IMG/VR virus record: IMGVR_UViG_3300047319_001872
Span: 249,316-313,315 of that record
Length of the DNA: 64,000 nt
Strand: one strand, 5' to 3'
Numbering within the stretch: the first letter of the stretch is position 1; every line of letters starts with the position of its first letter. Positions 3,947 to 63,411 of this stretch are shown here, piece by piece. The position numbers and the translations under genes are program-made. The notes under the pieces were generated by a model. It did not search any database. It saw only the letters and a list, made by a program, of their open reading frames with translations, and had not been told where the DNA came from.

Positions 3947-3986
3947 CGGCATAAGGCCCAGGGGGAAACCCCTGGGCTCTATGACG
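3947..3986. terminator. Hairpin between convergent genes, flanked by CGGCATA / TATGACG
   Basis: gcccagggg-gaaa-cccctgggc inverted repeat. Confidence 0.75.
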
Positions 3987-3989
3987 CGT

Positions 3990-5507
3990 TTACGAGGCTT
4001 TGAAGAGGTTCTTCACCGCACTGGCAGCGTGGCGTTGCCGCATGCGCTCAGCCTGCTTAGCGAGCGCCTGGATGGCTTCTGGGGCCTTGCTGTCATGCGA
4101 GGACACTTCCAGGTCCCGATAGATCGCTACCGCAAGTCGATAAGCAAAACCGGTCACGCGGGCCGCCATGGTTTCCACGATGGAACGGTACGCATTCATG
4201 CGGTTTGCAATCATCGACAGGTCGCGCACATCCTGACGCACCGAGTCCAGCGCTTCACGCATTTCCGAGGCCATCGAGTGCTCCGGCATGTCTTCGGCGC
4301 CATCGGTCAAGATATTGCCAATCCCGACTTCGAGCAGATCCAGCCACTTCTCGATGGTGAGCAAGCGAAAAGCGACATCCCGGCCGGTTTCGATCAGCTT
4401 CTTGGTCGGTCCCGTCGAAAGGGCTTGCGCCATCGAAGCGAACACCATCTCAAACGAAAGCGCCAGATGCGGCTCGCCTTCGCTGGCCTGCAGGTAGATG
4501 TGGTTGTAGTTCGACGCCACATCCTGCAGATTCATCTGACGACCCTGAAAGCTCACCTGCACGCGCTGGTTCAGCACATCCAACGTGCGGCCTGCGATGA
4601 GCTGATCGGCAAACGAGGTCGAGCCCTTATTGGCCAACACGCCCGAGAGCGCGGTAGCTTTCTGGTTCATCACCGAGAGCGCTTGCTCCATGGTGTCAAC
4701 GAGGGCTTCGGTGGCTTGTGACCACGGACCGTTATCAACGATGTCGTGAAAGATCGGGTTACGACCTTCCATGAACTGACGCACTTCGTCACTGGCTTCG
4801 GTGTCGTACAGATAGTGCGCGACCAGCTTATCGAAGTCACTGACATGTTGGCTCTGGCCGTGCTGGTCTTTCAACTCGACGCCGCGTTTGATTTCCTTTA
4901 CGGCGGCTGAGGCGAGGCTCTTGAGCTCCTCCAGATCCTTGACGATCTCGTCGGCGCGGTACTCCTGCTGCTTGGCGGACTGCGTGACTTCTGCCAGGAT
5001 CTGCTCATTGGACTTGCTCATGAGCTTTTCGTTCGGGTCCCGCGAACCCACGAGCCAGAGCACGAAGCGCCGGATCATTTCGCGAATGCGCCGAATGAGA
5101 TCGGCGAAGGTGCTCTTCAGCTTATCCCACAGCGACTCCATCGCGGGCTTGTAGCGCGTGAGGGTGGGTGACTTGCTGTAGTAGTTCAGGTGCTTATTGC
5201 CGTCGAACTCGGGGTAAAGACGCTTGGCTTCCTGGGCGAAAGACTGGTTCATACCGCCGACCTTTTTCAGGTCGGCGAGTACGTACTGGAGATCTTCCAG
5301 GCAGGCGGACTCCGCCGCGATGATCCTCAGGTCGTCTTTGAGCTCGGGCACTTCACCCGGCACGACTTCCTTAAAGATGTCATGCGCGGTGAGCTCATCC
5401 ATGACGGCCACATCAGGCAAAGACTTCACCTCAACGATGTCATCGCCAAGCGTTGCTTCTTCGTCGAGTTCGACCCCGTGATTGAGGCCGAATTCCGACA
5501 GGTCCAT
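3990..5507 (-). CDS. Internal head (ejection-type) protein with acidic propeptide (505 aa)
   Basis: Start moved to ATG 5507 (TAATG overlap with upstream stop); acidic N-terminus; 'AME/SLWDKLK' fits the S/A/G-X-E prohead-protease site plus amphipathic helix typical of phiKZ head proteins. Confidence 0.65.
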   Translation of the reverse strand: MDLSEFGLNHGVELDEEATLGDDIVEVKSLPDVAVMDELTAHDIFKEVVPGEVPELKDDLRIIAAESACLEDLQYVLADLKKVGGMNQSFAQEAKRLYPEFDGNKHLNYYSKSPTLTRYKPAMESLWDKLKSTFADLIRRIREMIRRFVLWLVGSRDPNEKLMSKSNEQILAEVTQSAKQQEYRADEIVKDLEELKSLASAAVKEIKRGVELKDQHGQSQHVSDFDKLVAHYLYDTEASDEVRQFMEGRNPIFHDIVDNGPWSQATEALVDTMEQALSVMNQKATALSGVLANKGSTSFADQLIAGRTLDVLNQRVQVSFQGRQMNLQDVASNYNHIYLQASEGEPHLALSFEMVFASMAQALSTGPTKKLIETGRDVAFRLLTIEKWLDLLEVGIGNILTDGAEDMPEHSMASEMREALDSVRQDVRDLSMIANRMNAYRSIVETMAARVTGFAYRLAVAIYRDLEVSSHDSKAPEAIQALAKQAERMRQRHAASAVKNLFKAS

Positions 5508-5962
5508 TACGCGTGCTCCGTCACCGAGATGATGGTCATCGCTTCGCGCACGAGATTGAAGATCTCGTCCTTGTGGTCGTTGACGAACTGGTGCATGTCG
5601 TCCGCAAGCCAGAGCGTAGCACCCGCCCAGCAATCGACGAAGCCGAGCTTGGCTTCCACGTTATACTGCAGGCCCGGATAAGCCGCCGAGTAACGCAGCA
5701 GCCAGAAAGCGCGCATGGCTTCACGGCAGTAGCGCGTGTCGAACACCACTTCTTCGTTGAAGTCCGCGATGTAGTTCGAGGCACCCAGTGCGACTTGGGT
5801 GAGGAAGTAGTTGCTCGGTTCGACTTCGAGCGCCAGCGACGGCAGGCCCAGCTTGTTGGCAATCGCGATACCGACGGCTGCGCCGATAATCTTGCCGCGC
5901 TCGCTCGGGTCCTTGATATAGGTGTCGGCGTAGCGGGAGAAGCCCAGAAACTTGATGTCCAT
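5507..5962 (-). CDS. Hypothetical, probable virion protein (151 aa)
   Basis: Translationally coupled within the head-protein operon. Confidence 0.6.
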   Translation of the reverse strand: MDIKFLGFSRYADTYIKDPSERGKIIGAAVGIAIANKLGLPSLALEVEPSNYFLTQVALGASNYIADFNEEVVFDTRYCREAMRAFWLLRYSAAYPGLQYNVEAKLGFVDCWAGATLWLADDMHQFVNDHKDEIFNLVREAMTIISVTEHA

Positions 5963-5986
5963 GTTATTCAGTCCAGTGACAGAGGG

Positions 5987-7300: not shown

Positions 7301-7395
7301 GATTTCCCTAGGGTGATTTCATCAATAATCAGAAAATACCGAAGGCGGCCATCTTCTGACGTGAATGTCATAGAAATGAAGCCGCCGGAGCGAAC

Positions 7396-7713
7396 ATGCT
7401 ACAAATGTTGTTGGAATGGTTGCGTAGTCTGCCACTGGATCAGTGCAATGCCTGTCTGGAACTCGCGGGGGCGGGGCTTCGGATGCTGGACTGTTACCGG
7501 CTCTACCAAGCCAAACGATTCGTAGGAGGATCGATTTTTACGGCCCTGTTCTTTTTTGGCTGGGGCATGTTCAATGTGGTGTATTATCCGTCGTTGCACC
7601 AGGTCTATAGCTTTGCGGCAGCCCTTGCGCTGACAGCTGTGAACGGCCTGTGGATTGTGATGGCGGTGTTTTATAATTGGCGTTACAACAAACAACAGGG
7701 TCTATCAGCATGA
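7396..7713 (+). CDS. Small 3-TM membrane protein (PQ-loop/SemiSWEET-like topology)
   Basis: Three hydrophobic segments in 105 aa; GGAG RBS; ATGA overlap with the next gene. Confidence 0.6.
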   Translation: MLQMLLEWLRSLPLDQCNACLELAGAGLRMLDCYRLYQAKRFVGGSIFTALFFFGWGMFNVVYYPSLHQVYSFAAALALTAVNGLWIVMAVFYNWRYNKQQGLSA

Positions 7714-9683: not shown

Positions 9684-9700
9684 AGCCAAAAAAAAAGAGA

Positions 9701-9740
9701 TGACATACTGCCCTCCCCGTAACGGGGAGGGCTTATGCCG
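9701..9740. terminator. Hairpin between convergent genes, followed by TATGCCG
   Basis: gccctccccgt-a-acggggagggc; A-tract upstream on + (U-tract on -). Confidence 0.75.
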
Positions 9741-9743
9741 CCG

Positions 9744-9977: not shown

Positions 9978-9978
9978 C

Positions 9979-10515: not shown

Positions 10516-10541
10516 GATTTACTCGTAAAAGAAAAGCAATC

Positions 10542-11442: not shown

Positions 11443-11524
11443 TGTAATTTCCTTTTCTATTCTAAGTTGATCAACTCATTCCGGACATAAAGGAGGCCGA
11501 AGCCTCCGATTCCGTGTTACTTTC

Positions 11525-11983: not shown

Positions 11984-12052
11984 GATACTCTCCTGAATTA
12001 TTGATCAACTCTAAAGGTCATAGGCGGGAAGCCGAAGCCTCCCGTTACGTCG

Positions 12053-13075: not shown

Positions 13076-13125
13076 TTCCTCTCTCCTGAGGGTCATAGCG
13101 GGAGGCCGAAGCCTCCCTTATGTCG

Positions 13126-14142
13126 TTAGTCCCGGTATTCAATCCGGAACTTCGTGACGGGGTAGCTGCCATCCCCGCACAGATCTTCTTCGAGCTCCGA
13201 CGAATCAAACACACCGGGATACGCTTCGTCGATCGCGTCACGCCGCACGCAGTCGCAGCTCGCGTTGTTCTCTTCCCAGTCGAAGATGGCGTAGTGGCCT
13301 TCGTAGCCGTAGCCATAGTCCTTGGTGATCTCGTACTCCTTGCCCTTGTAAAGCAGGGAGAGCACCGCAACCGTGCGCTTACGCACCAACGGACCTTCCG
13401 ATTCAGTCCACTCGAGCGTGTTGTAGAACTTCGGCAACAGCTTGAGGAACTCGGTCACCTGGGCTTTGAACATCTCGCGGTCTTCTGCGCTGTCGAAGTA
13501 CATCGCGCGCTGGTACATTTCGCCACCAGCACGCGGTACATCGGGCTTGCCGTAGCGCCCCACGAAAAGCGGATTGCCAAACGCCGCGCCGGTGAAGCTC
13601 AGCCGGTATTCCGTCTTACCGAACTTCGACGCTTGCTTGATAAACGCGGCATCTTCATCGCTCACTGCTTCGAAGAGTTCGCGCTCCGGGATGTACGGAC
13701 CCGTGAAGGTCTTTTCGAGCACCCATTGCTTAAAGTCCTCAGGCGGCTCGACGTTATGCTCTTTGACGTAGTGCATGAGCCCTTCCGGCCAGCACCAGTC
13801 TTCGATGCGGAACTCTCTGTAGCCATTGCTCTCACCGCAGCACCGGCAGGTCGATGAACCCCGATAGTGCTCGATGAACTGGTAGATGAACTGCCAGCGC
13901 GGCGTGAGCGAATTGTACTGCCAGAACGGGATCGAAGGCTTACCAGTGATCTGGCGTGCTTCAAAATCATCATTCCAGACCTTTGATGCTTTCTGTACCT
14001 TGACTAGTTCATTCCAGTAGACCGCTTCGATCCACGCGAGGTTGAGCAGGAACTCATCTTGTCCTACCCACTTCTCTTTCTGCGGCAACGGCCACGGGAA
14101 CGTGGGTTCTGCATCGCTATACCAAAATCCAACTTGTTTCAT
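13126..14142 (-). CDS. Hypothetical protein with putative Zn-binding motif
   Basis: AAGGAG RBS; 'CRCC...WPEGLMHYVKEH' and C-terminal 'CDC'. Confidence 0.65.
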   Translation of the reverse strand: MKQVGFWYSDAEPTFPWPLPQKEKWVGQDEFLLNLAWIEAVYWNELVKVQKASKVWNDDFEARQITGKPSIPFWQYNSLTPRWQFIYQFIEHYRGSSTCRCCGESNGYREFRIEDWCWPEGLMHYVKEHNVEPPEDFKQWVLEKTFTGPYIPERELFEAVSDEDAAFIKQASKFGKTEYRLSFTGAAFGNPLFVGRYGKPDVPRAGGEMYQRAMYFDSAEDREMFKAQVTEFLKLLPKFYNTLEWTESEGPLVRKRTVAVLSLLYKGKEYEITKDYGYGYEGHYAIFDWEENNASCDCVRRDAIDEAYPGVFDSSELEEDLCGDGSYPVTKFRIEYRD

Positions 14143-14916: not shown

Positions 14917-14952
14917 GACGGCATAGAGGGAGGACCGTAGTCCTCCCAGGCT

Positions 14953-15801
14953 TTATGCCCCGTAGAGCTGAGTACATGCCCCGTAGTTGCTGGCCATCTT
15001 GGTGTCGTACTGGTTCGCCGCGTAGTTCGGACCGTTGTAGACCTTCGCAAAGAGGGCCCAGTTACGTGCCTTCAAGGCGGTCTGCAATTGACCACTTGCG
15101 TACTTCTGGCAAAACGAGACGAACGCCATCAGGTGGGTATCTTCAGACTTGCGCATCGCCGTCACAAAGGAGCCAACATCAGCATAACCACAGAACGAGA
15201 AGTTCTCGCCCATGATCTGGAAAAGTCCCCAGGAAGCGGACATCATCGCACAGTCCTGGTCGATCGCAAATGCCCGGTTAAAGCGCGGGTACTCACCCGC
15301 CCCACCCGAGTAGCCACCCGACTGCGGATTGCAGATGTCGCTGTTGCCTGCTGCCATCAACTTATTGACCTGGGCCTGGCCGTACTTCTTCACCAGATAG
15401 CCGTAGAACTTGTGGCGCTCAAAGAGGATGATACAGCGACCATCAGGCAAGAAGCCCGCACCACTGGTTTCGGTCATGCACACGGCGCGCACCGCAGACT
15501 GACCAATCCCGAGCAATTGCGCGGCATCTACATAGTCCGGCGTTTGCAGATACTTGCCCGTGATAAACGCATCCAGCAGATTCTGGGTTGAGGCGTCGTA
15601 AAGACCCGAGGCCGGAATGCCTTGCTTGGTCTGGTATTGGGTGAGCGCAGTAATCGAGAGCGGCCCAAAGTTACCGTCCGGTTTTAGCGGCGGCGTGATG
15701 CCCTGTTTTTCATTCAGTGCTTTCTGAATGCCCTTGGTGTAATCGATGTCAAACTGGTTCGGTACTGCAGCACCCAGCTTCACCGGTGTGATCAGCGTCA
15801 T
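14953..15801 (-). CDS. Modular endolysin: peptidoglycan-binding domain plus N-acetylmuramidase (DUF3380 type)
   Basis: DGNFGPLSITALTQYQ (PG_binding_1); 'AVCMTETSGAGF...ILFERHKF...SASWGLFQIMGEN...WALFAKVYNGPNY...YD'. Confidence 0.9.
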   Translation of the reverse strand: MTLITPVKLGAAVPNQFDIDYTKGIQKALNEKQGITPPLKPDGNFGPLSITALTQYQTKQGIPASGLYDASTQNLLDAFITGKYLQTPDYVDAAQLLGIGQSAVRAVCMTETSGAGFLPDGRCIILFERHKFYGYLVKKYGQAQVNKLMAAGNSDICNPQSGGYSGGAGEYPRFNRAFAIDQDCAMMSASWGLFQIMGENFSFCGYADVGSFVTAMRKSEDTHLMAFVSFCQKYASGQLQTALKARNWALFAKVYNGPNYAANQYDTKMASNYGACTQLYGA

Positions 15802-15899
15802 CCCTACTCCCTTAACGTAATAGAACCCCCGAGGCATGGAACCCCGCTATAGGATTCCATGACCTCGAGGGCACTATGCCGCTAAAGCAGCCGTATTAC

Positions 15900-24935: not shown

Positions 24936-24963
24936 AAGTACAAGAAGCAAAAAAAAAAGACGG

Positions 24964-25009
24964 GGTCATAGAGCCAGGAGCCCTTACGGGTCTCCTGGCT
25001 CCTATGCCG
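24964..25009. terminator. Hairpin between convergent genes, flanked by GGTCATA / TATGCCG
   Basis: gagccaggag...ctcctggctc; A-tract at 24949-24958. Confidence 0.75.
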
Positions 25010-25016
25010 TCAAGGC

Positions 25017-27821: not shown

Positions 27822-27896
27822 TTGCGTTCCTTGGTTTTTTAGGGGCATAGGGCCAGGAGTTTCCCCCTGGCCCCGTTCTTCCCTGATTACCTGTAG

Positions 27897-29513: not shown

Positions 29514-31544
29514 TTAACCCATCCCGAGTACTTCGACGGGGCAAATCAATGCGTCCATCGGGTGATCCGGGCGGTTCTTCTTCGTGTAGCTTTCCGGCGA
29601 GATGAACACGTCGTAGTGACCTTCGTACGCCATCGTTGCCGAGAGCGAGCGTCGATCCATGGTCATGTCCATCACACCCAAGCCGCGATCCGTCCACGGC
29701 TTCGGCAGGCGATAGTCATCTTCTTCTGCGCTGATGATCATCGCCCCGTACAGCACGACTTCCAGCACCGCCAGATTGACAGTGAGTTTGTCGTTCACGA
29801 GGTTGTACAACTCGACCAAGAACGCGTCGGGTGACACGTCCTTATCCCGCGCTTCCATCTGCTTCTTACTCGACTCCAGCATCGAGGCGATGTCTTTCGA
29901 GTGATCGCTCATGTTGAAGTGAATCAGCGGCAGCGTCATCACAGGCTCATTCCAGTCCCAACCCGTCATGTCAATGACGTAGTCGTTATTGGCATTGAAG
30001 TCCCAGCGCACCTTGCGGATATGGCGCAGCATCGGATAGGTGAGCGAGGCGAGGCGCCGATCCTTGGAGGTATTGACACGCTCCGGATCGAACTCCACAT
30101 TGCCCTCTTTCACCTGCACCGCGATTTCCCGCATCTCCGACACCTGTCGGATGTTCAGGTCATCGATGCTGTGGTTAGCCAACACGTCGGTAATGTTCGG
30201 GGCGAACATCGCCGGAATGATCAGCTTCACCGTCTTGCCCTTGAGTCGATCGGCAAGCAGATACGACATGCCATCGGCACTGATCTTGAAGAACTTCTTC
30301 TCATCAGGCGTCAGGCTTGCCGGTTCTACAGCGGCCGAACTATCCAAGTGCTTAACCGACAGCACGGACTGCGAGGACTTCTGCGTCATCGAGGTGCAAC
30401 ACATGTGACCCAAGTTGGTCCGATCGTCCAGTACGGACAGGCTGAGTTCACCGAAACAGGTGGCACACACCCCATACGGATCAGGATGCGCGCAGTGAAT
30501 CACCGAGCGCAGCCGAATACTCTTGCCGATCAGATTCTCTTGGTCGTACTTGTCGCCACGAATCACCCGCAACCCGCCGGTCTTCTCGTCGACATAGAAC
30601 TTGCCGAGGAGCAGAGGCAGGTCACCACCGAAGACTTCATCGCCTTCCTCGTTCACTTCCTTACCCCGCACTTGCCAGCGCAGGGTTTCGGTCGTGCCAC
30701 AGTCGCAATTCTGGTGCAAGTTGCGCACCGTCTGACACATCAGCTGCAAGCGGCGGGAGAAATACTCCGCTTCCTGCAACGGCGACTTCGAGAACTGCAA
30801 TGCCTTCGCTGCCGAGCGCGACTCAATCACCGAGTCGTACAGACTGCGAATCCCTTCGACGTAGCCAGGGATGATCGGATAGCGGAACTGGTCCGAGTCG
30901 ATGTCGGTCAGATAACCGCGCGGCCCGATCGACTGCTGCACCTGGTTGGCATTCACGAGCTTGGAGCGCAGCGCCAGCGACACTGCGTTCAGCGGCAAGT
31001 CCTGGCCATTGCCGAGCACATCATCGATCACGCCATAGGCTTCCTTGATCATGCGACCGCCTTCGTCCGGGGTCTTGTTGACCGCGTCCTTGACCTTTTC
31101 CTTCATCGCGATGATCTTCGGATGATCGAGCACTTCCATCCAGTCCAAGATGTCCATCGAGCCCACATCGGCTTCGCACCGATAGCTCATCTCGTTGTAG
31201 ATGATGTTGTTCAGCTGATAAATACGCTGCGCCAACACATCGCGCCCGACCGCATCGCCGTAGATCTCGTAGACCGACCACATGCAATTGCCCAACAGAT
31301 CGAGTGGCGTACTCGCGCTGTACCGCTTCTTGCCCAACACGCCGTCGATATGGTGGTGTTTGAGCAGCGGGGTTTTGCCCCACTGCCGATGGAACTCCCA
31401 CGCATACGACGAGATCACTGTCTTGCGCCAGTTGGTTTCCAACTCCTGGTTGTCGTCGAAGATCAGAATGAACCGCCCCGTGAGGGTGTCCCACAGGTCA
31501 TCGGTGGTCATCGCGAGCAACTTCCTGGCCCGGATCTTAATCAT
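29514..31544 (-). CDS. Non-virion RNA polymerase beta'-like subunit, C-terminal part (phiKZ gp74-like)
   Basis: 'GPRGYLTD', 'EYFSRRLQ', 'DCGT', 'LRSVIHC...VCATCFG', 'SQSVLSVKH'. Confidence 0.85.
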   Translation of the reverse strand: MIKIRARKLLAMTTDDLWDTLTGRFILIFDDNQELETNWRKTVISSYAWEFHRQWGKTPLLKHHHIDGVLGKKRYSASTPLDLLGNCMWSVYEIYGDAVGRDVLAQRIYQLNNIIYNEMSYRCEADVGSMDILDWMEVLDHPKIIAMKEKVKDAVNKTPDEGGRMIKEAYGVIDDVLGNGQDLPLNAVSLALRSKLVNANQVQQSIGPRGYLTDIDSDQFRYPIIPGYVEGIRSLYDSVIESRSAAKALQFSKSPLQEAEYFSRRLQLMCQTVRNLHQNCDCGTTETLRWQVRGKEVNEEGDEVFGGDLPLLLGKFYVDEKTGGLRVIRGDKYDQENLIGKSIRLRSVIHCAHPDPYGVCATCFGELSLSVLDDRTNLGHMCCTSMTQKSSQSVLSVKHLDSSAAVEPASLTPDEKKFFKISADGMSYLLADRLKGKTVKLIIPAMFAPNITDVLANHSIDDLNIRQVSEMREIAVQVKEGNVEFDPERVNTSKDRRLASLTYPMLRHIRKVRWDFNANNDYVIDMTGWDWNEPVMTLPLIHFNMSDHSKDIASMLESSKKQMEARDKDVSPDAFLVELYNLVNDKLTVNLAVLEVVLYGAMIISAEEDDYRLPKPWTDRGLGVMDMTMDRRSLSATMAYEGHYDVFISPESYTKKNRPDHPMDALICPVEVLGMG

Positions 31545-31573
31545 TACATCCTCCTTGTTTCATGATCCGTTAA

Positions 31574-34279: not shown

Positions 34280-34330
34280 GGCAGAGTCGCTATAGATGAC
34301 TCCCTGGAATAAAAAAAGAAGATCGGTAAG

Positions 34331-34364
34331 CAGCAGAGGGCCGAAGCCCTCTGCTGTTATGCCG
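34331..34364. terminator. UUCG hairpin between convergent genes, followed by TATGCCG
   Basis: cagcagaggg-ccgaag-ccctctgctg. Confidence 0.75.
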
Positions 34365-34382
34365 TTAAGGGCAACGCCCTAG

Positions 34383-43737: not shown

Positions 43738-45207
43738 TTAAGCGGCTTCAGCCAACAACATCATCTTGTTCCACTTGGCTTGATCCACCGATTCGTCCGT
43801 GTCATGCAAGAAGTTCGCCGTGGTGGCAATCACCGGTTTAGGTTGCGCGAGGTTACTCGACACCTTCTTCGGCTGGTCGAGACCAAACGTGCTCTTATGC
43901 GGCGCCAGGGCCCGCAGTTCTTCGGTCGTGTAGTTATCCAGACACGGCGTGAAGTTCAGCTGGTCACCATCGAAGTCCGCGTTCAAGCCCTTCACGTCCA
44001 GAATACTGATCGAGACGGTCGGGATCTCCACCACAGACTTCACTTGCGTCACATACACGAGCTGCGCCGAGCCGCGTTCCAACGAGGGGTTACGCTGCAT
44101 GATACACGGAATGCCTTTGTACGGACATTCTGCGATCAGCTCCTGGAACAACTGATCCAGGTCCTCGTTGTAAATCGACGCGTGCTTGTTCAGGAACGCG
44201 ATTCCTTCGTTCGGTGTGTAACCACGCCGTATCAGCTTATTCATCAAGTGGATACGGAACACCGACAGACCGATCCCCCACGGAATGTGGATTTCCTCGT
44301 AATCGTGCGCATCCGTCAACGACGAGATCACGGCACGGAACGAGAAGTGGGAACGAGAGCCGAACACGTGCTTACGGAAAATCCCCTGCTTCTTGGCGAG
44401 CGTGGTCTTATACAGACCCTCGTAAAACTCCGCCAATTGCGAGATCGTCTTCACGGTCCGATTCTCTTTCACACGCACGGTGTGAGAGGTCAGGGAGGAA
44501 TCGATGCCTGCCATCATGCGAATCGCATCCACCGCACCGGTGATGATGGGGTCCACATAGGTGCCGACGTTGCTCTCCTCGATCACGAGAAGCGCCCGGT
44601 TCGGCAAGGGCAGGTGATCGCTAAACACGCAGTCCCGTTGATTGCGTATCGCCGTCATGAGCTCCAGATGCTCCTCACTCTTGCGATACTCCTTGAGATC
44701 CATGAGCAACGCCATGATCTCGTCGAACTTGTTCACGAAGTTGTTCAACCCGCGCGGGCAGTTCAACTCCTCCAGCCGATACACGACCTGGGGCTTACGC
44801 ACCGGCGGCGCGTAGTTCGTGTCACAAATCCAGCGAATGATCTCATAACCACTGCGGGTGAATCGCTTCTTCAACATCATCCACACGATCGGGTTGATCA
44901 GGCCATCGACGCCTTTCGGCCTTCTGATCCACACGATCGGTTCGAGGTCACGCTCCACATGCGAGCGGACTTCTGTGCCGCAGGAGCCACATACCACACC
45001 GACGTTGTAGCCACCAACGATCTCCCCACATTCGCACGACGGCAGATTGCTCAGCAAATCGCCCGAATAGGTGGTATAGATCAGTCGGTTAAACTCTTGC
45101 CGATCCTTCTCCGATGATTCCGCAATCTCGTTGATGATCTTCGGCTCGCGCGTCGAGTGCTGGTAAAACAGCTCGTTGAAATTGATCAAACTGAGTCTTA
45201 CGCCCAC
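43738..45207 (-). CDS. Non-virion RNA polymerase catalytic beta'-like subunit (phiKZ gp55-like), uninterrupted
   Basis: Catalytic NADFDGD; CECG...CGSC Zn finger; 'KQGIFRKHVFGSR..FSFRAVI'; 'RNPSL'. Confidence 0.92.
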   Translation of the reverse strand: MGVRLSLINFNELFYQHSTREPKIINEIAESSEKDRQEFNRLIYTTYSGDLLSNLPSCECGEIVGGYNVGVVCGSCGTEVRSHVERDLEPIVWIRRPKGVDGLINPIVWMMLKKRFTRSGYEIIRWICDTNYAPPVRKPQVVYRLEELNCPRGLNNFVNKFDEIMALLMDLKEYRKSEEHLELMTAIRNQRDCVFSDHLPLPNRALLVIEESNVGTYVDPIITGAVDAIRMMAGIDSSLTSHTVRVKENRTVKTISQLAEFYEGLYKTTLAKKQGIFRKHVFGSRSHFSFRAVISSLTDAHDYEEIHIPWGIGLSVFRIHLMNKLIRRGYTPNEGIAFLNKHASIYNEDLDQLFQELIAECPYKGIPCIMQRNPSLERGSAQLVYVTQVKSVVEIPTVSISILDVKGLNADFDGDQLNFTPCLDNYTTEELRALAPHKSTFGLDQPKKVSSNLAQPKPVIATTANFLHDTDESVDQAKWNKMMLLAEAA

Positions 45208-45291
45208 TCGTTTCTCCTTGTTTCCTGTTTACTCGGGTACGGAATACCACTAGCTAGATGATACTCCAATAGATACCTCACCCCTGTAAAA

Positions 45292-45324
45292 AGAAAAAAA
45301 AGAGGGACCCGAAGGCCCCTCTTT
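45292..45324 (-). terminator. Intrinsic terminator after chimallin
   Basis: aagagggg-ccttcgggt-ccctctt hairpin followed by a T-tract on -. Confidence 0.75.
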
Positions 45325-45372
45325 CGACCGCTTGCGCGGAAATGACTACTGCCGCGCTACGTATTCAGCTGC

Positions 45373-47283
45373 TTACCAGCGCGAGCTGAAGCCCGTGCGA
45401 CCCCAGCCAGCGCCTTGGTTCGACTGACCGCCGAAGCCTGCCGCGAACAGACCGGTTGCACCCGGAGCCATGAGCAGGCCGTTGGCGAACTGCGCCGTTG
45501 CACGCTCTTGACCCGCGACGTCGCCGAACGGGTATTGTGCACGCAGGACGAGACCCGCATCCACGCAGCCCTTGGCCAGCGCTTCCATGAACGCACCGTC
45601 CAGCGTTGCACGACGTGCGAAACCCGTGAAGGTTGCGTCGCCGACCAGACCCTGGATGATGTTCTTGCGACGCGCGAGACGCTGCGCGGGCGAGATTTGC
45701 AGATTGACAAACGTGTCGCTCCAGTCCTTGATGACCGTCGGGTCCTTCTCGCCGATCAGGTTCGCTACCGCGAGGTAGTCGATGTCGCGGATGTCGCGCT
45801 TGCGACCTTGCTGGTCGACGTACCAACCCAGGTGAATGCGGTTGTTGTTGTCGAACGCAACGCGGCCCGTGCCGTTCGTGTAGTGCTTCAGGAAGTTGCC
45901 GTTCGTCAGCGTCTGCGCTGCTTCGATGATGAACTCGTTGGCCTTCTGGCTGCCTTCAGCAGCAGCCGCGAACACCGAGTTCGACCAGGTCGACGGACCG
46001 CATTCCGGCACGTCGATCGAGAGCAGCAGGCCCGGACGCACGAAAGCTTGCAGCAGCTTGTGCAGCGTGCCTTGTGCCGTGAACGCGTCCGACTTCGTGT
46101 CGATGCGCGCGCCGATACCGTTCGCGTTGCCTTCCGGGTTCGCTTCGATACCGATTGCACCGATGTCGTGCATGTCGATGCCTTGCGCGTAAGGACGCGG
46201 TGCGAAACCACGTGCCCAGGCGTTGCCGTCACGCAGCGTGAGTGCCTGAACCAGCGCGAACAGCTGAGCCGGAACGGTCATCAGCTCGAGCGTTTCCAGG
46301 TGCGTCATCACGAAGTGCGTGATGTACAGCGGGTTGAACTGCTGTTGCTGCGACTGACCCCACTGCGCGTACGGGTTCGCGGTCGGTGCGACCGGGTCCC
46401 ACACGAGGTCGAGGAAGCCGCCGACTTGCGAGACCTTCGTCGCGCGTGCGTCTGCATTGGCGCCCTGGCCGGTCGTGATTGCCGTGGCGATCAGGTCGAT
46501 CATCACGTCGGTGCGGATCGGCTCGCCGACCGGGTCAACCAGCTGGTCGTGGTTGAACGCGACGCGTGCGGTCAGGTTCGAGTCACGTGCTGCGCCTGCG
46601 AGGTTCAGGTCGCGGAAGTCCGGACGCATGCGGTTCAGTTCGTGGTTCGCTGCAAACAGTGCGTTCGCGGCGAGCTGGTACACGAGCTGTTCGTCTGCGA
46701 CGTCGAACGAACGCGGCACGACTTCGGCTTCAGCGTCGATCAGACGCGCGCCGTTGAACGTACGGGCCACGGCATCGGCCACGACTTCGCGGAACTTGTC
46801 GTCCCACACGTCGCCGTCGACACGCTGGATTTCGACGTTCTGACCGTTGATCTGGTCGTACTTCGGCGGGAACGGTTCGCCCGAGCCTGCGAGGATCAGC
46901 GTGTGGTACGCGACGCCCAGGTCCAGGTCGTTCTTGTCGAACAGGGCCACGATGAGCGCCGAGCGCGCGATCGCCGGGTTGTTGTTCATGTCGAGCGGGA
47001 GCAGCTTGATCTCGAAAGCCGGGTTCGCCGACTTGTACGTTTCGATCAGGGCCTTCTCGAGCTTGACGAGCACTTCAGCAGCCGGGTTGCGGCCCATCGG
47101 TGCGTTGCCCAGGCGGCCGAGCGAGCGGAAGCTGAAGCCCGCCGGTGCGGATTGTTGTTGCTGGTTCATGGTGCCTCGCGGTTGAGAGTTCTGGTTATCC
47201 TTGGCACGGGTGAAACCCGCTGCCATTTGCGTTTCCGCCGGAGCTGCTGCTTGGCCTTCTTGGCCCGGTTGTTCGATTGCCAT
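45373..47283 (-). CDS. chmA: Chimallin, phage nuclear shell protein (636 aa)
   Basis: Size, position immediately upstream of the gp55-like RNAP gene, strongly biased codon use, disordered N- and C-terminal segments, early promoter upstream. Confidence 0.85.
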   Translation of the reverse strand: MAIEQPGQEGQAAAPAETQMAAGFTRAKDNQNSQPRGTMNQQQQSAPAGFSFRSLGRLGNAPMGRNPAAEVLVKLEKALIETYKSANPAFEIKLLPLDMNNNPAIARSALIVALFDKNDLDLGVAYHTLILAGSGEPFPPKYDQINGQNVEIQRVDGDVWDDKFREVVADAVARTFNGARLIDAEAEVVPRSFDVADEQLVYQLAANALFAANHELNRMRPDFRDLNLAGAARDSNLTARVAFNHDQLVDPVGEPIRTDVMIDLIATAITTGQGANADARATKVSQVGGFLDLVWDPVAPTANPYAQWGQSQQQQFNPLYITHFVMTHLETLELMTVPAQLFALVQALTLRDGNAWARGFAPRPYAQGIDMHDIGAIGIEANPEGNANGIGARIDTKSDAFTAQGTLHKLLQAFVRPGLLLSIDVPECGPSTWSNSVFAAAAEGSQKANEFIIEAAQTLTNGNFLKHYTNGTGRVAFDNNNRIHLGWYVDQQGRKRDIRDIDYLAVANLIGEKDPTVIKDWSDTFVNLQISPAQRLARRKNIIQGLVGDATFTGFARRATLDGAFMEALAKGCVDAGLVLRAQYPFGDVAGQERATAQFANGLLMAPGATGLFAAGFGGQSNQGAGWGRTGFSSRW

Positions 47284-51859: not shown

Positions 51860-52996
51860 ATGCACGGCCTTTTTAATTTGTTGCCTGGTGTCAATCTGCC
51901 CACCATGTATGCAGCAAATTGGCATTACGCCAAAGAGGGACTCAAACACAACCTCAAAAAGGTCGTGGAGTTCTATCACTCGCATTCCATGGCAGTCGAA
52001 TCGGAGCACTTCCTGATTCGTTTGCTGCAATCCATCAGCACACCTAAAGCCCTGAGCCTCGATCGTTACTACGCAATCGTGGACGCACTGTCATTGAATC
52101 TTGGCATGGCGTTAAAAATGACTTCGTCGATTTCCAAGGGTCACGTGTTTTCCGGGGTGTTCTATGGGCCAGGTTGCACCGAAGTCTTGATTGCAGAAAA
52201 TGCTGAGTTCGATCCCGTCGACGCCACCCGTAACTGGGAGCACGTACAGGCTATCCGGGTGTTGCGGCATCCGCGCAGTGATTTGATGCTCAATCTCCCC
52301 GATGGTAAGAAGACCGGTTCGGAAGAAGGCATCGCTGTGATCGCGATCAATATCCCGATGCTGGCGGTTCAATACCGGGCGTTTCGCCTACAGGAAGATG
52401 CCTATACGGTGCGCACTGGAGAGCCCGGTCGCACTATCCAGCAGTTTGTCCACATGCACGTGTTGCCCAATATGCTCTACACGCATCTGGACTATGTGAT
52501 CCTGAACCGGATCTGGAATCTGCTGCATGGTGCCCCGATGGGCGAAGGTAAACCCCATTCCTTCTACATCACGGACTTTAGCCAGAAGCTCAATGCCGTG
52601 CACACCACCATCCTCACGAATCTGCAAGCAGTGGGCCAGGACTTTACGGGGGTGCTGCGCAGTATTCCGTGCGTGAGCAAAGACAATCTGGATGAGGCCC
52701 TGGCGATTCCGGAGATGGCCCCCACCCGGCAAGTGGAATGGGCCTTGGCTTTGTCGCGCTTCCCGGCGCTGGATGTGATGGTGGATCTCACCGAAGGCGG
52801 TAACCAGGGCGGTGCCAATATCCGCAACCAGCAACAGTTAAACATCCTGATGCAGGCCGTGCGTCAGTATCGCTCAGGCGCTTACTTCTCAAGTGTACTG
52901 ACGGGCGATGTGTTGTACGACGTCAATACGGAAATCGATGAGCTGGTCGAGAAGATTCGCCAACGCAGCGGTACCGTACAAGCTACGCCGACTTAA
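51860..52996 (+). CDS. Conserved core protein (phiKZ gp52-like), probable virion/late protein
   Basis: 378 aa; opposite strand between chimallin and DNA polymerase blocks, as recalled for phiKZ-like phages. Confidence 0.6.
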   Translation: MHGLFNLLPGVNLPTMYAANWHYAKEGLKHNLKKVVEFYHSHSMAVESEHFLIRLLQSISTPKALSLDRYYAIVDALSLNLGMALKMTSSISKGHVFSGVFYGPGCTEVLIAENAEFDPVDATRNWEHVQAIRVLRHPRSDLMLNLPDGKKTGSEEGIAVIAINIPMLAVQYRAFRLQEDAYTVRTGEPGRTIQQFVHMHVLPNMLYTHLDYVILNRIWNLLHGAPMGEGKPHSFYITDFSQKLNAVHTTILTNLQAVGQDFTGVLRSIPCVSKDNLDEALAIPEMAPTRQVEWALALSRFPALDVMVDLTEGGNQGGANIRNQQQLNILMQAVRQYRSGAYFSSVLTGDVLYDVNTEIDELVEKIRQRSGTVQATPT

Positions 52997-53043
52997 GGGC
53001 ATAAAAGCCACAGGAGCCAGGGGTACCCCTGGCTCCTATGACG
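52997..53043. terminator. Hairpin between convergent genes, flanked by GGGCATA / TATGACG
   Basis: aggagccagggg-ta-cccctggctcct. Confidence 0.75.
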
Positions 53044-53052
53044 TCGCTGCCG

Positions 53053-53334: not shown

Positions 53335-53592
53335 TATAACCCCAAAAGTAGCGTATTGTTTCCTTTTCTCGAGTGGCCCGAAACCCCACTCATAACGATG
53401 CACTATTTAACGGCATATGGGGTCGATCACCCACCTCGCCCGGTACAGGACGCGGTCGGTGATCTTTTGCACCCCTCTCCAATTAACAGTGAGAGAGGTG
53501 CTCGCCCAGACAGCTAGATAGGGTAAGGGTGCACCAAGTGAATCAGGTAAGCCGACGTGAATGTCCTGCTTTCTGCTTACCTGGGTCGAGTC

Positions 53593-55778: not shown

Positions 55779-55830
55779 CGGCATAAAAAGGAAAAAAGGG
55801 CGAGGAGCGGTTTCGGGCCGCCACCTCGCC
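55779..55830 (-). terminator. Hairpin, U-tract and TATGCCG
   Basis: ggcgagg...cctcgcc inverted repeat; A-tract and cggcata on +. Confidence 0.65.
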
Positions 55831-55959
55831 TAAATACAGGTCGTTACAAGTACCGAAAAGGAAAACCAGTCACTGAACATGCCCGATCAATTCGGAGCCA
55901 CAGAGACTCTACTACCACTACCACTTCAACCAAAATCGAGATAGACAGGGGCCAGCTTA

Positions 55960-60188: not shown

Positions 60189-60247
60189 GGCGGCTCCTTA
60201 TACACAGTATCCAGCGGCTACGTTTGTTTTGACTATTTGTGTAACTG

Positions 60248-60307
60248 CGGCATAAAAAAATAATCAGTCCCTTTTGCACCCTCCCGTAGGAAGGCATAAA
60301 AGGGACT
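60248..60307 (-). terminator. Hairpin, U-tract and TATGCCG closing the post-PhuZ region
   Basis: agtccctttt...aaaagggact; A-tract and cggcata on +. Confidence 0.65.
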
Positions 60308-60309
60308 CG

Positions 60310-60925
60310 CCTCGTCCGATGCTCACCCAAACAGCTACCCGTAAAACGGACTGTGGTATTGTTGCGGTCGGAACTGAGGCGGTCTGGACATCTCAAGCTG
60401 CGAGCCAAGTGTTAGGCCCTAGTGCTAATTTTTAGACAGTCCATGGACCTCTAAACAATTGCTTCGGGTACTCCCTTGAAAACTGTCGCACTTATTGCCT
60501 CCTGCGCACCAGTAGGCGGCAGGCCATTACTCACGGAATGTAAAAGACCCTAGCCCCCGATGCACCCCCTGCGCCTGATGCGCGGTTCGGCTGGAATGGG
60601 ACTAAAGTCTGCGCATGGCCAAATCATCGGTCCGAGTCAACGGGCCAAGCGCATCGCCTCAATGGCTGAAGGTACTACGAGCACCCTTAGCTCGCGTTGC
60701 CTTCCCCAGCTGGGGACGTCGCGCATGATGTCTATTCACCCTCGCATGCGCCTGCAAGGGTGAGGACCGATGAACTTTACGAGTGGCGGCGGCCTGAATG
60801 GACGGGAACCACGAAAAATCGTGATAGATAAACCGTCCAAAGTCAGACCACCACCACCGGGCCAGAGAGCTGATCTGGCTAAACATCGGTTCTTATTGCT
60901 TTCCTTATCGTGTCGTCCAGCGTTG
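60310..60925 (-). ncRNA. Candidate ~600-nt structured RNA downstream of phuZ
   Basis: No credible ORF; nested helices whose mismatches are G-U only on the - strand. Confidence 0.5.
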
Positions 60926-60928
60926 TTG

Positions 60929-62486: not shown

Positions 62487-62515
62487 GTAATATAGGTCTG
62501 AAATTGTTTTCAATC
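62487..62515 (-). promoter_or_regulatory. Early promoter GATTGAAA-N13-TATATTAC
   Basis: Same bipartite motif and spacing with one mismatch. Confidence 0.7.
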
Positions 62516-62567
62516 GACTTTTAACACGCGATCCTATGTAGATTCTTTTTTTGAGCGGAGGCCTAGA

Positions 62568-63371
62568 GTGAATCCTATCACCCGAGCTGTGGATGATCTG
62601 AAGTTCCGGATTCCACGGCGTGTATTGGAAGAGGTGTTTGTCGAGCGCACGGCCCGTTGGCGCACAGCCCCGCGTTCGATCGACGAATGTATTTTGGAAC
62701 AAGTGGTCCGCCCTCGTGTCCTGGTGGACTGCAATCTCGTGGGTGGCACGGAAGCATTCGTCTATCTGGACGATATTCCGTACGAGCGGATGAACGACTA
62801 TACGTCGGTGTATCGCATCCCGAAGACCAAGACGCAGGGGCGCTCGATTCTGTCGGTGCTGAACATCACGTTCGCCGACCCCACCAAAGTCTCAAGCTAC
62901 GGGGTGGCCGCGGGTGCGCAGAACACGACCATGCTGCAAGCCGGACAGGCCGTGATGGACGCCTACGGGGCCTTGCCCGTGACCTCAACGCATCGCGTGC
63001 AGTTGATCGGGGAAAACACGATCATGGTGCGCGACACCATAGTGCTGCCCCCTGATGTGTATCTGCGCTGTATTCTCGCCAATGACGAGAACATGTCGCA
63101 CATCCAGATGCGCAGCTACCGGCCGTTCTGTCGGCTGGTGGAACTCGCGGTGAAAGCCTACATCTACAATGACCAAGTCATCGAGGTGGACATCGGCAAG
63201 ATCCGGGGTGGTCAGGAAATCGGTAAGTTCAAGGAAATCGTCGAGGAGTACAAGGACGCGGAAGAACAGTATCAGGAGTTCCTCGCCACCACCTGGCAGA
63301 AGGTGGCGTACATGAACGACAACGAAACGTTTAACCGCTTTGTACGCAGTTTGATTGGTGGCTATCGGTAA
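62568..63371 (+). CDS. Conserved core, probable virion (neck/adaptor-like) protein
   Basis: GGAGG RBS with GTG start; TATG at about 62536 upstream; function inferred. Confidence 0.6.
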   Translation: MNPITRAVDDLKFRIPRRVLEEVFVERTARWRTAPRSIDECILEQVVRPRVLVDCNLVGGTEAFVYLDDIPYERMNDYTSVYRIPKTKTQGRSILSVLNITFADPTKVSSYGVAAGAQNTTMLQAGQAVMDAYGALPVTSTHRVQLIGENTIMVRDTIVLPPDVYLRCILANDENMSHIQMRSYRPFCRLVELAVKAYIYNDQVIEVDIGKIRGGQEIGKFKEIVEEYKDAEEQYQEFLATTWQKVAYMNDNETFNRFVRSLIGGYR

Positions 63372-63373
63372 CA

Positions 63374-63411
63374 CGGTCATAGCGGGCAGCCCTAGGGCTG
63401 CCCGTATGCCG
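63374..63411. terminator. Hairpin between convergent genes, flanked by GGTCATA / TATGCCG
   Basis: cgggcagccc-ta-gggctgcccg. Confidence 0.75.

What the first reader, a model, noticed from the sequence alone, without database searches (positions are those of the whole stretch)
3947..63411. Recurrent gene-end signal: hairpin followed by TATG(C/A/T)C(G/C), often without a U-tract
Seen: on +, TATGHC follows hairpins at 3980, 9734, 13119, about 14954, about 15875, 25003, 34358, 53037 and 63405. On -, it follows hairpins at 3947, 9701, about 11484, about 12017, 13090, about 14919, 24964, about 27843, 52997, about 53411, 55779, 60248 and 63374. Convergent junctions mostly carry it on both sides, while several co-directional junctions carry it only on the transcript's 3' side, so it acts as a strand-specific sequence and not just a stem extension. 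Established: TATG is the phiKZ late-promoter core. Inference: a termination or processing signal read by a phage RNAP or RNase.
Basis: partly seen in the sequence, partly recalled or inferred. Interest (0 to 1): 0.65.

Follow-up and report, generated by a model that had tools for sequence, protein, structure and literature searches.

The report
Jumbo-phage terminators with TATG tail
The recurring "hairpin followed by TATGCCG" signal is real, and it is the gene-end transcription terminator already mapped by RNA sequencing in phiKZ-type giant phages, so this uncultured soil relative gives a new example of a known signal, not a new kind.

Summary
All 22 listed sites exist, and each has a stable hairpin upstream. 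The window is the last 64 kb of a 313-kb nucleus-forming jumbo phage. It encodes chimallin and split RNA-polymerase subunits, and its nearest relative is Burkholderia phage FLC9.

Genome-wide there are 69 GC-rich tetraloop hairpins followed within 0-3 nt by TATG(C/A/T)C. The consensus tail is YY-TATG-M-Y-G-Y-Y.
- 65 of the 69 stems are different sequences.
- In co-directional junctions the tail lies on the sense strand 35 times and on the antisense strand 7 times.
- 29 of the 35 sense copies have no complementary CATA, so the tail is not a stem extension.
- Most convergent junctions carry it on both strands.

This matches the published phiKZ terminator motif, a stem-loop plus TTATKYYGT (Putzeys 2024). 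When I placed published RNA 3' ends on the sequences, transcripts ended 1-2 nt after TATG in all eight validated 201phi2-1 terminators and at motif positions 2-5 in six phiKZ TATG-type terminators. That is about 5-9 nt past the stem. In phiKZ, late start sites use other TATGs.

The same tail is the top 4-mer after hairpins in FLC9, Ralstonia FLC1-1B, Erwinia Desertfox and phiKZ, but not in an SPN3US-like phage or AR9. No RNA data exist for this phage. Which enzyme reads the tail is untested.

The parts
3945..3988 (.). Bidirectional terminator between convergent genes 3662-3946(+) and 3990-5507(-). Hairpin 3955-3978 (GAAA/UUUC loop). Tails: TATGACG on + at 3980, TATGCCG on - at 3947-3953.
   Evidence: The orthologous FLC9 junction has a different stem and the same tails.
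9699..9742 (.). Bidirectional terminator between convergent genes 7710-9683(+) and 9744-9977(-). Hairpin 9710-9732. Tails: TATGCCG (+, 9734) and TATGTCA (-, 9701-9707). On the - strand a run of 9 T follows at 9687-9695.
   Evidence: The same hairpin occurs again at G000:~141,360-141,395. In FLC9 the stem differs and the tails are kept.
11481..11507 (-). Sense-only terminator after gene 11525-11983(-). UUCG hairpin 11507-11492, tail TTTATGTCC. No CATA on the 5' side.
12014..12044 (-). Sense-only terminator after gene 12053-12742(-). UUCG hairpin 12044-12025, tail CCTATGACC.
   Evidence: A strain variant's replaced segment ends exactly here.
13089..13127 (.). Two-sided element in a co-directional (-,-) junction. 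Hairpin 13100-13117 (UUCG on the sense strand). Sense tail TATGACC (13091-13097), antisense tail TATGTCG (13119).
14917..14960 (.). Two-sided element in a co-directional (-,-) junction. Hairpin 14928-14947 (UACG on the sense strand). Sense tail TATGCCG (14919-14925), antisense TATGCCC (14954). An early-promoter-like CTATATTAC follows at 14888 (-).
   Evidence: FLC9 has an orthologous element with the TATG(A/C)CGTCGATTC stretch conserved.
15821..15881 (.). Long imperfect hairpin after gene 15900-17447(-). TATGCCG lies on the antisense (+) strand at 15875. The sense-strand tail is the variant TATTACG.
   Evidence: gene strand
24962..25011 (.). Bidirectional terminator between convergent genes 24726-24935(+) and 25017-26855(-). 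Hairpin 24971-25001. Tails: TATGCCG (+, 25003) and TATGACC (-, 24964-24970). A run of 10 T follows on the - strand.
   Evidence: The orthologous FLC9 junction is at L004 20077/20109.
27841..27873 (-). Sense-only terminator after helicase-like gene 27897-29429(-). GAAA hairpin, tail TATGCCC. It lies 22 nt before the next start codon.
   Evidence: The element is identical in FLC9.
34330..34366 (+). Terminator after gene 33941-34279(+) at a convergent junction. Hairpin 34330-34357, tail TATGCCG at 34358. The - strand sees the same hairpin (UUCG loop) with the degenerate tail CTTACCG and then a T-run.
   Evidence: FLC9 orthologue at L004 28242.
52995..53045 (.). Bidirectional terminator between convergent genes 51860-52996(+) and 53053-53334(-). 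Hairpin 53007-53042. Tails: TATGACG (+, 53037) and TATGCCC (-, 52997-53003).
53411..53462 (-). Hairpin, then a 7-nt spacer, then TATGCCG, in the 259-nt gap after DNA-polymerase gene 53593-55722(-). Atypical spacing.
55779..55831 (-). Canonical-looking terminator (hairpin + T-rich tract) with TATGCCG 13 nt after the stem.
60248..60306 (-). Long hairpin + T-rich tract + TATGCCG 11 nt after the stem. A second TATGCC (60293) lies inside the 5' arm.
63373..63413 (.). Bidirectional terminator between convergent genes 62568-63371(+) and 63422-63892(-). Hairpin 63383-63404. Tails: TATGCCG (+, 63405) and TATGACC (-, 63375-63381).
29514..33799 (-). Two jumbo-phage multisubunit RNA-polymerase pieces (29514-31544 and 31574-33799). 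These are candidate readers of the signal.
   Evidence: phrog_3015 E = 1e-182; phrog_3295 E = 8e-227; 80.7% aa identity to FLC9, 37% to phiKZ-group phages
43738..47283 (-). A third RNA-polymerase piece (43738-45207) and the nuclear shell protein, chimallin (45373-47283). These mark the phage as phiKZ-like and nucleus-forming.
   Evidence: phrog_2987 E = 4e-158; phrog_4795 E = 4e-109

Best explanation
These are the phiKZ-type transcription terminators of a nucleus-forming jumbo phage.

Each is a GC-rich RNA hairpin of 7-15 bp, usually closed by a UUCG/UACG or GNRA tetraloop on the sense strand. It starts a median of 17 nt after a stop codon. A conserved tail YY-UAUG-(C/A)-Y-G-Y-Y follows, and it occupies the position a U-tract holds in ordinary intrinsic terminators. 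By analogy with mapped RNA ends in phiKZ and 201phi2-1, the transcript ends 1-2 nt after UAUG, about 5-9 nt past the stem. The tail is therefore the last stretch of RNA:DNA hybrid.

At convergent gene pairs the tail is present on both strands (CATA...TATG), which gives a bidirectional terminator.

The rest is inference, not shown. The Y-U-A-U next to the stem supplies weak base pairs for the hairpin to invade. The conserved pyrimidine-then-G at tail positions 5/6 resembles the Y(-1)G(+1) core of the consensus pause of multisubunit polymerases. That pause would hold the enzyme at the right distance for the hairpin to act, replacing the long U-tract. The same tail recurs in phages of Pseudomonas, Erwinia, Ralstonia and Burkholderia at 38-57% GC. 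This points to the phage's own polymerases as the main reader, although host polymerase can stop there too.
For: Anatomy and statistics in this genome:
- 69 hairpin + TATGHC elements, 65 with distinct stem sequences.
- TATG follows intergenic hairpins 86 times, against 6-20 times for ten other 4-mers tested.
- TATG is the most enriched of all 4-mers after perfect stems in the window, at 11x.
- Sense-strand bias of 35 to 7 in co-directional junctions; 29 of 35 sense copies lack a complementary 5' CATA.
- Sense-strand loops in co-directional junctions are UUCG (15), UACG (4) and GNRA (5) of 35, which fits an RNA-level role.
- By the strict hairpin criteria, 14 of 21 convergent junctions carry an element, 10 of them on both strands.

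Consensus: YY-TATG-M-Y(93%)-G(64%)-Y-Y. This fits the published phiKZ tail TTATKYYGT.

Mapped RNA ends in relatives:
- All eight published 201phi2-1 termination sites fall 1-2 nt after TATG or TATA, 7-9 nt after the stem.
- The six phiKZ TATG-type sites in 100-150 kb fall at motif positions 2-5.
- Those 201phi2-1 terminators reduced downstream reporter expression in vivo.

Lineage: the window encodes chimallin and split RNA-polymerase subunits.

Conservation:
- Six orthologous junctions in FLC9 keep the tails. Five have different stems that still pair, and one is identical.
- TATG is the top 4-mer after hairpins in FLC9 (30x), FLC1-1B (17x), phiKZ (14x) and Erwinia Desertfox (12x). It is weaker in RSF1 (4.4x). 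It is not enriched in an SPN3US-like phage (1.7x) or AR9 (1.3x).

Pause consensus: PMC6336406 and PMC6062546.
Against: - No RNA data exist for this phage. All 16 runs that hold it are rhizosphere metagenome DNA, so no 3' end has been seen here.
- Mapped 3' ends in the relatives cannot by themselves separate termination from trimming or cleavage.
- The tail has a G/C-rich distal half (GCCG), which does not fit the weak-hybrid logic of classical intrinsic termination.
- G at tail position 6 is present in only 64% of copies.
- A few hairpins carry TATG only on the antisense side (G000 2760, 87622, 144486, 154674). Three of the four have a TGTG-variant or U-tract tail on the sense side.
- Host polymerase also terminates at such sites in 201phi2-1, so a phage-specific reader is not required.
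- ONT end positions are precise only to about +/-2 nt.
Confidence: 0.85

Rival explanations
1. The TATG behind the hairpin is a late promoter (start at the G), placed just after the previous gene's terminator. In this reading the motif belongs to the downstream gene, or the site does both jobs (stop and restart).
For: - TATG is the phiKZ late-promoter core, necessary but not sufficient. [quoted passage not shown]
- In co-directional junctions the motif faces the next gene, at a median of 63 nt from its start codon.
- Several copies lie only 14-26 nt before a start codon with just a ribosome-binding site between them. Examples are window 13091 and 27843. That leaves no room for any other promoter type.
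Against: - By the strict criteria 14 of 21 convergent junctions carry an element, 10 of them on both strands. There the motif points into the antisense of the opposing gene, whose stop codon is often 1-20 nt away.
- TATGCCG without a hairpin is not found facing genes in divergent junctions.
- Hairpin-less TATG upstream of genes shows only a weak sense bias, 88 to 66.
- In the phiKZ start-site table, none of 59 listed starts sits on a terminator's TATG. P054 starts 20 nt after termination site T046, P049 starts 5 nt after the terminator TATG, and P119L has no hairpin.
Confidence: 0.07
2. The signal is an RNA processing or stabilising site. A host or phage endoribonuclease cuts in the UAUG tail, or 3' exonucleases trim back to it. 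The hairpin then protects the upstream mRNA. The mapped 3' ends would be processed ends, not termination points.
For: - The sequence-specific tail has a G/C-rich distal half, which is unusual for intrinsic termination.
- Stable UNCG/GNRA hairpins are classic 3'-end protectors.
- ONT 3' ends cannot distinguish termination from processing.
Against: - 201phi2-1 terminators of this type lowered downstream reporter expression in a two-reporter trap in uninfected cells. That is the behaviour of a terminator, although cleavage could also uncouple the reporters.
- RNA ends lie 5-9 nt past the stem, which is the classical termination distance. Exonuclease trimming would be expected to stop closer to the stem.
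- The tail is conserved across phages of four host genera with different RNases.
Confidence: 0.07
3. The signal is a DNA-level palindromic repeat, such as a REP-like or mobile element, a recombination or module boundary, or a protein-binding cruciform. In this reading it has no direct role in RNA.
For: - Strain variants in metagenomes swap segments whose edges lie at or next to these elements (9983-12016 and 14824-14914).
- Four hairpin sequences occur twice. Two of these repeats lie at different loci; the other two are the two strands of one palindromic hairpin.
- The two-sided copies are palindromes.
Against: - 65 of 69 stems are different sequences, so the elements are not copies of one element.
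- There is a strong bias to the transcribed strand, and RNA-specific tetraloops sit on that strand.
- Most co-directional copies are not palindromic beyond the stem (29 of 35).
- The position is fixed just after stop codons, a median of 17 nt.
Confidence: 0.01

Closest known systems
Conserved phiKZ terminator motif (Putzeys et al. 2024, Microlife 5:uqae002; PMC10914365)
   Same: - A GC-rich CCYCCCC...GGGRRGG-type stem-loop followed by TTATKYYGT.
- Found at 61 mapped termination regions.
- Bidirectional versions occur between convergent genes.
- Here the tail is YYTATG(C/A)YGYY. The stems are often GGGAGGC/GCCTCCC with UUCG loops, and the placement is the same.
   Different: - This phage has 56% GC against 37-38% for phiKZ, so the tail is TATGCCG here and TATGTTG there. 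That shows which positions are truly fixed (T-A-T-G, then Y, then G).
- The host is unknown and the source is rhizosphere metagenomes.
- No RNA ends have been mapped here.
201phi2-1 terminator motifs A and B (PMC11512511)
   Same: - Hairpin + TTTATG(C/T/A)(C/T)G tail.
- All eight validated termination sites lie 1-2 nt after TATG or TATA.
- An early promoter sits roughly 25-40 nt further downstream, as here.
   Different: - Motif B elongates the stem there. Here the elongation comes from the CATA/TATG flanks in two-sided copies.
- Activity has been tested in vivo only for 201phi2-1.
Canonical bacterial intrinsic (Rho-independent) terminator
   Same: - A GC-rich hairpin, with the RNA end about 7-9 nt after the stem.
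- Works without added phage factors in a host reporter assay.
- Bidirectional at convergent genes.
   Different: - No U-tract. Only Y-U-A-U next to the stem, then a conserved G and a G/C-rich distal part.
- Positions are sequence-specific, not merely U-rich.
- The standard hairpin + T-tract scan misses nearly all of them.
phiKZ late promoter core 5'-TATG-3' (Yakunina 2015, PMC4666361; IUCrJ 2026, PMC12809450)
   Same: The same four bases, on the same (non-template) strand relative to transcription.
   Different: - Promoter TATGs need no upstream hairpin (P119L).
- Terminator TATGs are not used as start sites in the phiKZ data.
- Terminator TATGs occur where no downstream gene exists (convergent junctions).
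AR9 and SPN3US-like jumbo-phage terminators
   Same: Hairpins at gene ends in phages that also carry split multisubunit polymerases.
   Different: Their hairpins are followed by T-runs. TATG is not enriched: 1.3x in AR9 and 1.7x in the SPN3US-like phage SEGD1. AR9's late promoter is also different, AACA-N6-T(A/G).

Membership tests
phiKZ-type conserved terminator | GC-rich stem-loop directly upstream of the tail | tested here: met
   68 of 117 intergenic TATGHC copies have a stem ending 0-3 nt upstream, against 7.3% of random intergenic positions. All 22 listed sites fold at -13 to -33 kcal/mol.
phiKZ-type conserved terminator | Tail matching TTATKYYGT | tested here: met
   The position matrix of 59 sense elements and of 86 hairpin + TATG sites gives YY-TATG-M-Y-G-Y-Y. 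TGTG and TATT variants also occur.
phiKZ-type conserved terminator | Sits at gene 3' ends on the transcribed strand; two-sided between convergent genes | tested here: met
   The hairpin starts a median of 17 nt after the stop codon. Sense to antisense is 35 to 7 in co-directional junctions. By the strict criteria 14 of 21 convergent junctions carry an element, 10 on both strands.
phiKZ-type conserved terminator | RNA 3' ends accumulate in the tail | not testable with these tools
   No RNA run holds this phage. In relatives the ends lie 1-2 nt after TATG in 201phi2-1 and at motif positions 2-5 in phiKZ.
phiKZ-type conserved terminator | Host phage belongs to the phiKZ-like lineage with its own multisubunit RNA polymerases | tested here: met
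   Rpb2_6 and Rpb1_2 domains, three RNA-polymerase PHROG families and the nuclear shell protein are all in the window. The beta-like subunit is 37% identical to phiKZ-group phages.
phiKZ-type conserved terminator | Reduces read-through (termination activity) | not tested
   Shown only for eight 201phi2-1 elements in a reporter trap.
Canonical intrinsic terminator | U-tract (at least 5 T in 8) starting 0-2 nt after the stem | tested here: not met
   The scan of window 1-20000 finds 23 sites against 18.4 expected and catches one TATG hairpin. Among strong sense hairpins genome-wide in co-directional junctions, 39 are TATG-type and 13 U-tract-type. In convergent junctions the counts are 27 and 1.
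phiKZ late promoter | TATG with transcription starting at the G, upstream of a gene on the same strand | tested here: inconclusive
   The TATG is present, but start sites cannot be mapped here. The motif occurs at convergent junctions with no gene downstream. In phiKZ, terminator TATGs are not listed as start sites.

The most novel reading that the evidence does not exclude
The tail is not a degenerate U-tract. It is a sequence-specific stop signal that co-evolved with the phage's own multisubunit polymerases. Those polymerases work inside the phage nucleus, presumably away from host termination factors.

Two mechanisms are possible. The non-template TATG could be caught during elongation by the same beta-lobe pocket that reads TATG at late promoters. 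Alternatively, the Y-G step could act as a built-in pause. Either would let a hairpin terminate transcription without a U-tract.

The clade distribution is what prompts this reading. TATG tails occur in the five tested genomes whose polymerase is closest to this phage's (those with a measured beta subunit are at least 33% identical) and are weaker in a sixth (RSF1, 4.4x). One of them, phiKZ, is known to use a TATG promoter. The tails are absent in AR9, which uses a different promoter, and in an SPN3US-like phage.
Probability: 0.25. Interest if true: 0.65.

Novelty: new member of a known kind. Interest (0 to 1): 0.3.

Why it matters
Practical use: the hairpin + TATG(C/A)YG rule gives a simple, strand-aware way to mark operon ends in uncultured phiKZ-like phages. 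Standard terminator predictors miss these sites because there is no U-tract.

Biological interest: the same tail is kept from 38% to 57% GC and across phages of Pseudomonas, Erwinia, Ralstonia and Burkholderia. It is missing in AR9 and an SPN3US-like phage. That pattern separates the fixed positions (T-A-T-G, Y, G) from mere U-richness. It also makes testable the open question of how the non-canonical jumbo-phage polymerases terminate. The finding itself re-discovers a published motif.

Tried and rejected
- RNA evidence. Laying four of them on window 9500-15400 (5,901 letters, within the operators' limit) gave only strain variation.
- Hairpin finders. My first three were too lax or too strict, or swallowed the TATG into the stem. 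I replaced them with a finder anchored on the stem's 3' end.
- Supplements. None are held for the two PMC papers. The bioRxiv version of Putzeys et al. holds the tables, and I read only the parts covering phiKZ TSS at ~20-118 kb and TTS at ~70-168 kb. Ceyssens 2014 is not held.
- Rfam and tRNA scans of the window found nothing.
- A hairpin-free TATG promoter class. The sense bias is only 88 to 66, which is not convincing.
- Stem extension only. Rejected, because 29 of 35 sense copies lack CATA.
- A repeat family by descent. Rejected, because there are 65 distinct stems.
- Chance. Rejected.
- No protein search, fold or complex prediction was needed. No alternative genetic code was used.

Full report
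**What the window is.** The window is G000:C1:249316-313315, the right end of a 313,315-bp virus record with direct terminal repeats. It has 56% GC. The nearest cultured relative is Burkholderia phage FLC9, at 74% nucleotide identity over part of the window, with shared gene order. The window encodes three pieces of jumbo-phage multisubunit RNA polymerase and the nuclear shell protein. The beta-like piece is 80.7% identical to FLC9, 38.7% to Ralstonia phage RSF1 and 37% to phiKZ-group phages. This is therefore a phiKZ-like, nucleus-forming jumbo phage. Its DNA is found in rhizosphere metagenomes. I called genes with a codon-usage scorer. That gave 375 genes, mostly on the minus strand, and the order agrees with FLC9's annotation.

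**Checking the observation.** All 22 listed sites carry the motif on the stated strand, and each has a stable hairpin upstream. The raw count of the heptamer in the window is not above chance: 36 against 31.9 +/- 5.9. The signal lies in where the copies fall.
- TATGCCG occurs 57 times in the genome, 48 of them in or next to intergenic DNA, an 8.8-fold enrichment.
- 117 of 203 TATGHC copies are intergenic (p = 8e-58).
- 68 of those 117 have a stem ending 0-3 nt upstream, against 7.3% of random intergenic positions (p = 4e-46).
- After intergenic hairpins TATG occurs 86 times, against 6-20 times for ten other 4-mers.
- In an unbiased count of all 4-mers after perfect stems, TATG ranks first in the window at 11x.

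*Corrections.*
- Sites 53411, 55779 and 60248 have 7-13 nt between stem and motif. The last two are ordinary T-tract terminators with the motif behind them.
- The 15875(+) copy is antisense, because the genes there are on the minus strand. The 825-aa plus-strand ORF is a shadow ORF. The sense-side tail of that hairpin is the variant TATTACG.

**Anatomy.** Genome-wide there are 69 hairpin + TATGHC elements, with 65 different stem-loop sequences.
- Stems are mostly 8-10 bp.
- The gap between stem and TATG is 0-2 nt in 54 of 59 sense copies.
- The tail consensus is YY-TATG-(C>A>T)-Y(93%)-G(64%)-Y-Y.
- In co-directional junctions the sense-strand loops are UUCG (15), UACG (4) and GNRA (5) of 35. 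These are RNA-stabilising tetraloops on the transcribed strand.
- The hairpin starts a median of 17 nt after the upstream stop codon.
- In co-directional junctions 35 copies are on the sense strand and 7 on the antisense strand (p = 1.5e-5). Three of the 7 share a hairpin with a detected sense copy.
- Of the four antisense-only cases, three have a TGTG-variant or U-tract tail on the sense side.
- 29 of the 35 sense copies have no CATA on the 5' side, so the tail is not an extension of the stem.
- By strict criteria 14 of 21 convergent junctions carry the element, 10 of them on both strands.
- In the window, five of six convergent junctions are two-sided.
- Canonical hairpin + T-tract terminators are not enriched (23 against 18.4 expected), and sigma-70-like promoters are depleted (2 against 7.9) in window 1-20000.

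**What it is.** Putzeys et al. (PMC10914365) mapped 133 termination regions in phiKZ by ONT-cappable-seq. They reported that 61 share a conserved stem-loop followed by TTATKYYGT, and they found bidirectional versions between convergent genes. The 201phi2-1 study (PMC11512511) found the same motif A in 59 terminators. It validated eight strong terminators in uninfected P. chlororaphis. The tail found here fits that consensus.

I checked this directly on sequence.
- In phiKZ 100-150 kb the same anatomy appears, for example after the major head gene.
- The eight 201phi2-1 termination sites given in the paper's text all fall 1-2 nt after TATG or TATA. That is 7-9 nt after the stem.
- phiKZ termination sites come from the preprint's supplementary table. 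The six next to a hairpin + TATG fall at motif positions 2-5. The 3' nucleotide is always a pyrimidine, and in 4 of 6 it is followed by G.

The tail therefore occupies the place of the U-tract, in the last RNA:DNA hybrid.

**Conservation.** At six orthologous junctions in FLC9 the tails are kept. Five have different stems that still pair, and one element is identical. TATG enrichment after hairpins:

| Phage | TATG enrichment | Rank or note |
|---|---|---|
| FLC9 | 30x | top 4-mer |
| Ralstonia FLC1-1B | 17x | top 4-mer |
| phiKZ | 14x | top 4-mer |
| Erwinia Desertfox | 12x | top 4-mer |
| Ralstonia RSF1 | 4.4x | weaker; some tails sit 3-5 nt from the stem |
| SPN3US-like SEGD1 | 1.7x | not enriched; TTTT leads |
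| Bacillus AR9 | 1.3x | not enriched; TTTT leads |

AR9's late promoter is AACA-N6-T(A/G), not TATG.

**The promoter question.** TATG is the phiKZ late-promoter core, with the start at G. [quoted passage not shown] Several facts argue against the terminator TATG being a promoter.
- P119L has no upstream hairpin.
- None of the 59 phiKZ start sites I read (P008-P066) lies on a terminator's TATG. P054 starts 20 nt beyond termination site T046, P049 starts 5 nt beyond a terminator TATG, and P016 starts about 25 nt beyond one.
- Early promoters (P017, P028) sit 30-40 nt beyond terminator tails.
- In this genome the motif occurs at convergent junctions, where nothing lies downstream.
- Hairpin-free TATGCCG does not face genes in divergent junctions.
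- Hairpin-free TATG shows only a weak sense bias, 88 to 66.

A dual stop-and-restart role is not excluded for the copies that lie 14-26 nt before a start codon. It is not the general explanation.

**How it most likely works.** Shown here: the anatomy, the strand bias, the placement and the conservation. Shown in relatives: RNA ends in the tail and termination activity. The rest is inferred. The hairpin invades a hybrid whose stem-proximal part (Y-U-A-U) is weak. The pyrimidine-then-G step at positions 5/6 resembles the Y(-1)G(+1) core of the consensus pause that acts on multisubunit polymerases. That step would hold the enzyme at the right distance. Conservation across four host genera and a wide GC range suggests the phage polymerases are the main readers. 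Host polymerase also stops at such sites.

**Limits.** No RNA from this phage exists in the runs searched. My gene calls are home-made. The phiKZ tables were read only in part. ONT ends are precise to about +/-2 nt. The comparative 4-mer tests used 30-50 kb per phage.

**Verdict.** The termination reading is supported by homology to an experimentally mapped motif. This is a new member of a known kind. What remains open, and moderately interesting, is who reads the conserved tail and why it shares four bases with the late promoter.

Noticed in passing
window 14888, 33906, 38924, 48041, 62487 (all minus strand); 14 more sites elsewhere in G000: An early-promoter-like motif (C/A)TATAT(T/C/A)AC, often preceded by GATTCAAA...TTTCAGCC. 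There are 19 intergenic copies, and 18 point at a same-strand gene 31-202 nt away. It resembles the phiKZ early promoter core TATATTAC and often sits 30-45 nt after a terminator tail, as in phiKZ P017 and P028. One copy precedes the RNA-polymerase gene 31574-33799.
   Followed up: partly
window 9687-9695 and 24947-24956 (T-runs on the minus strand); G000 20463, 44494, 80741, 106763, 115419, 134075, 136927: 10 of 59 sense elements have a run of 6-11 T starting 10-16 nt after the T of TATG. That is beyond the expected RNA end and too far from the stem to be a normal U-tract. FLC9 shows the same feature. Its function is unknown; a backstop or a DNA-level feature are possibilities.
   Followed up: partly
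window ~11465-11475 and ~11998-12008 (minus strand): The 11-mer GAGTTGATCAA follows two neighbouring terminators (11483 and 12016) at nearly the same distance, ahead of the next genes. It may be a shared operator or promoter element.
   Followed up: no
window 9983-12016 and 14824-14914: In metagenome strain variants, one 211-kb contig replaces 2,032 bp with 970 other letters, and the right edge falls exactly at the 12016 terminator tail. Another contig swaps 89 bp for 105 next to the 14919 element. Terminators seem to mark mosaic module boundaries.
   Followed up: no
window 55723-56289 and 60189-60928: Two long gaps (568 and 741 nt) have no credible ORF, tRNA or Rfam match. They contain nested hairpins and extra TATGCC copies (56132, 60293). 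They may hold non-coding RNAs or leader regions, as described for phiKZ 5'UTR-derived RNAs.
   Followed up: no
window 15876-18353 (+): An 825-aa open frame opposite the real minus-strand genes 15900-17447 and 17544-18638, in a 60% GC stretch. It is a shadow ORF, and it misled the strand assignment of the 15875 site.
   Followed up: yes
G000 2760, 154674 and others; window 15821-15830: Variant tails occur after otherwise typical hairpins: TGTG(C/A/T)C and TATTAC. This fits the K (G/T) in the phiKZ consensus and suggests the core is T-R-T-K.
   Followed up: partly
G000 upstream regions (examples listed): A repeated GCATCCTATGCG-like context surrounds hairpin-free TATGs 50-65 nt upstream of several genes. 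These are candidate late promoters of this phage.
   Followed up: no
window 1-20000: Sigma-70-like promoter matches are depleted (2 against 7.9 +/- 2.6 in shuffles). This is consistent with transcription that does not depend on the host polymerase.
   Followed up: no
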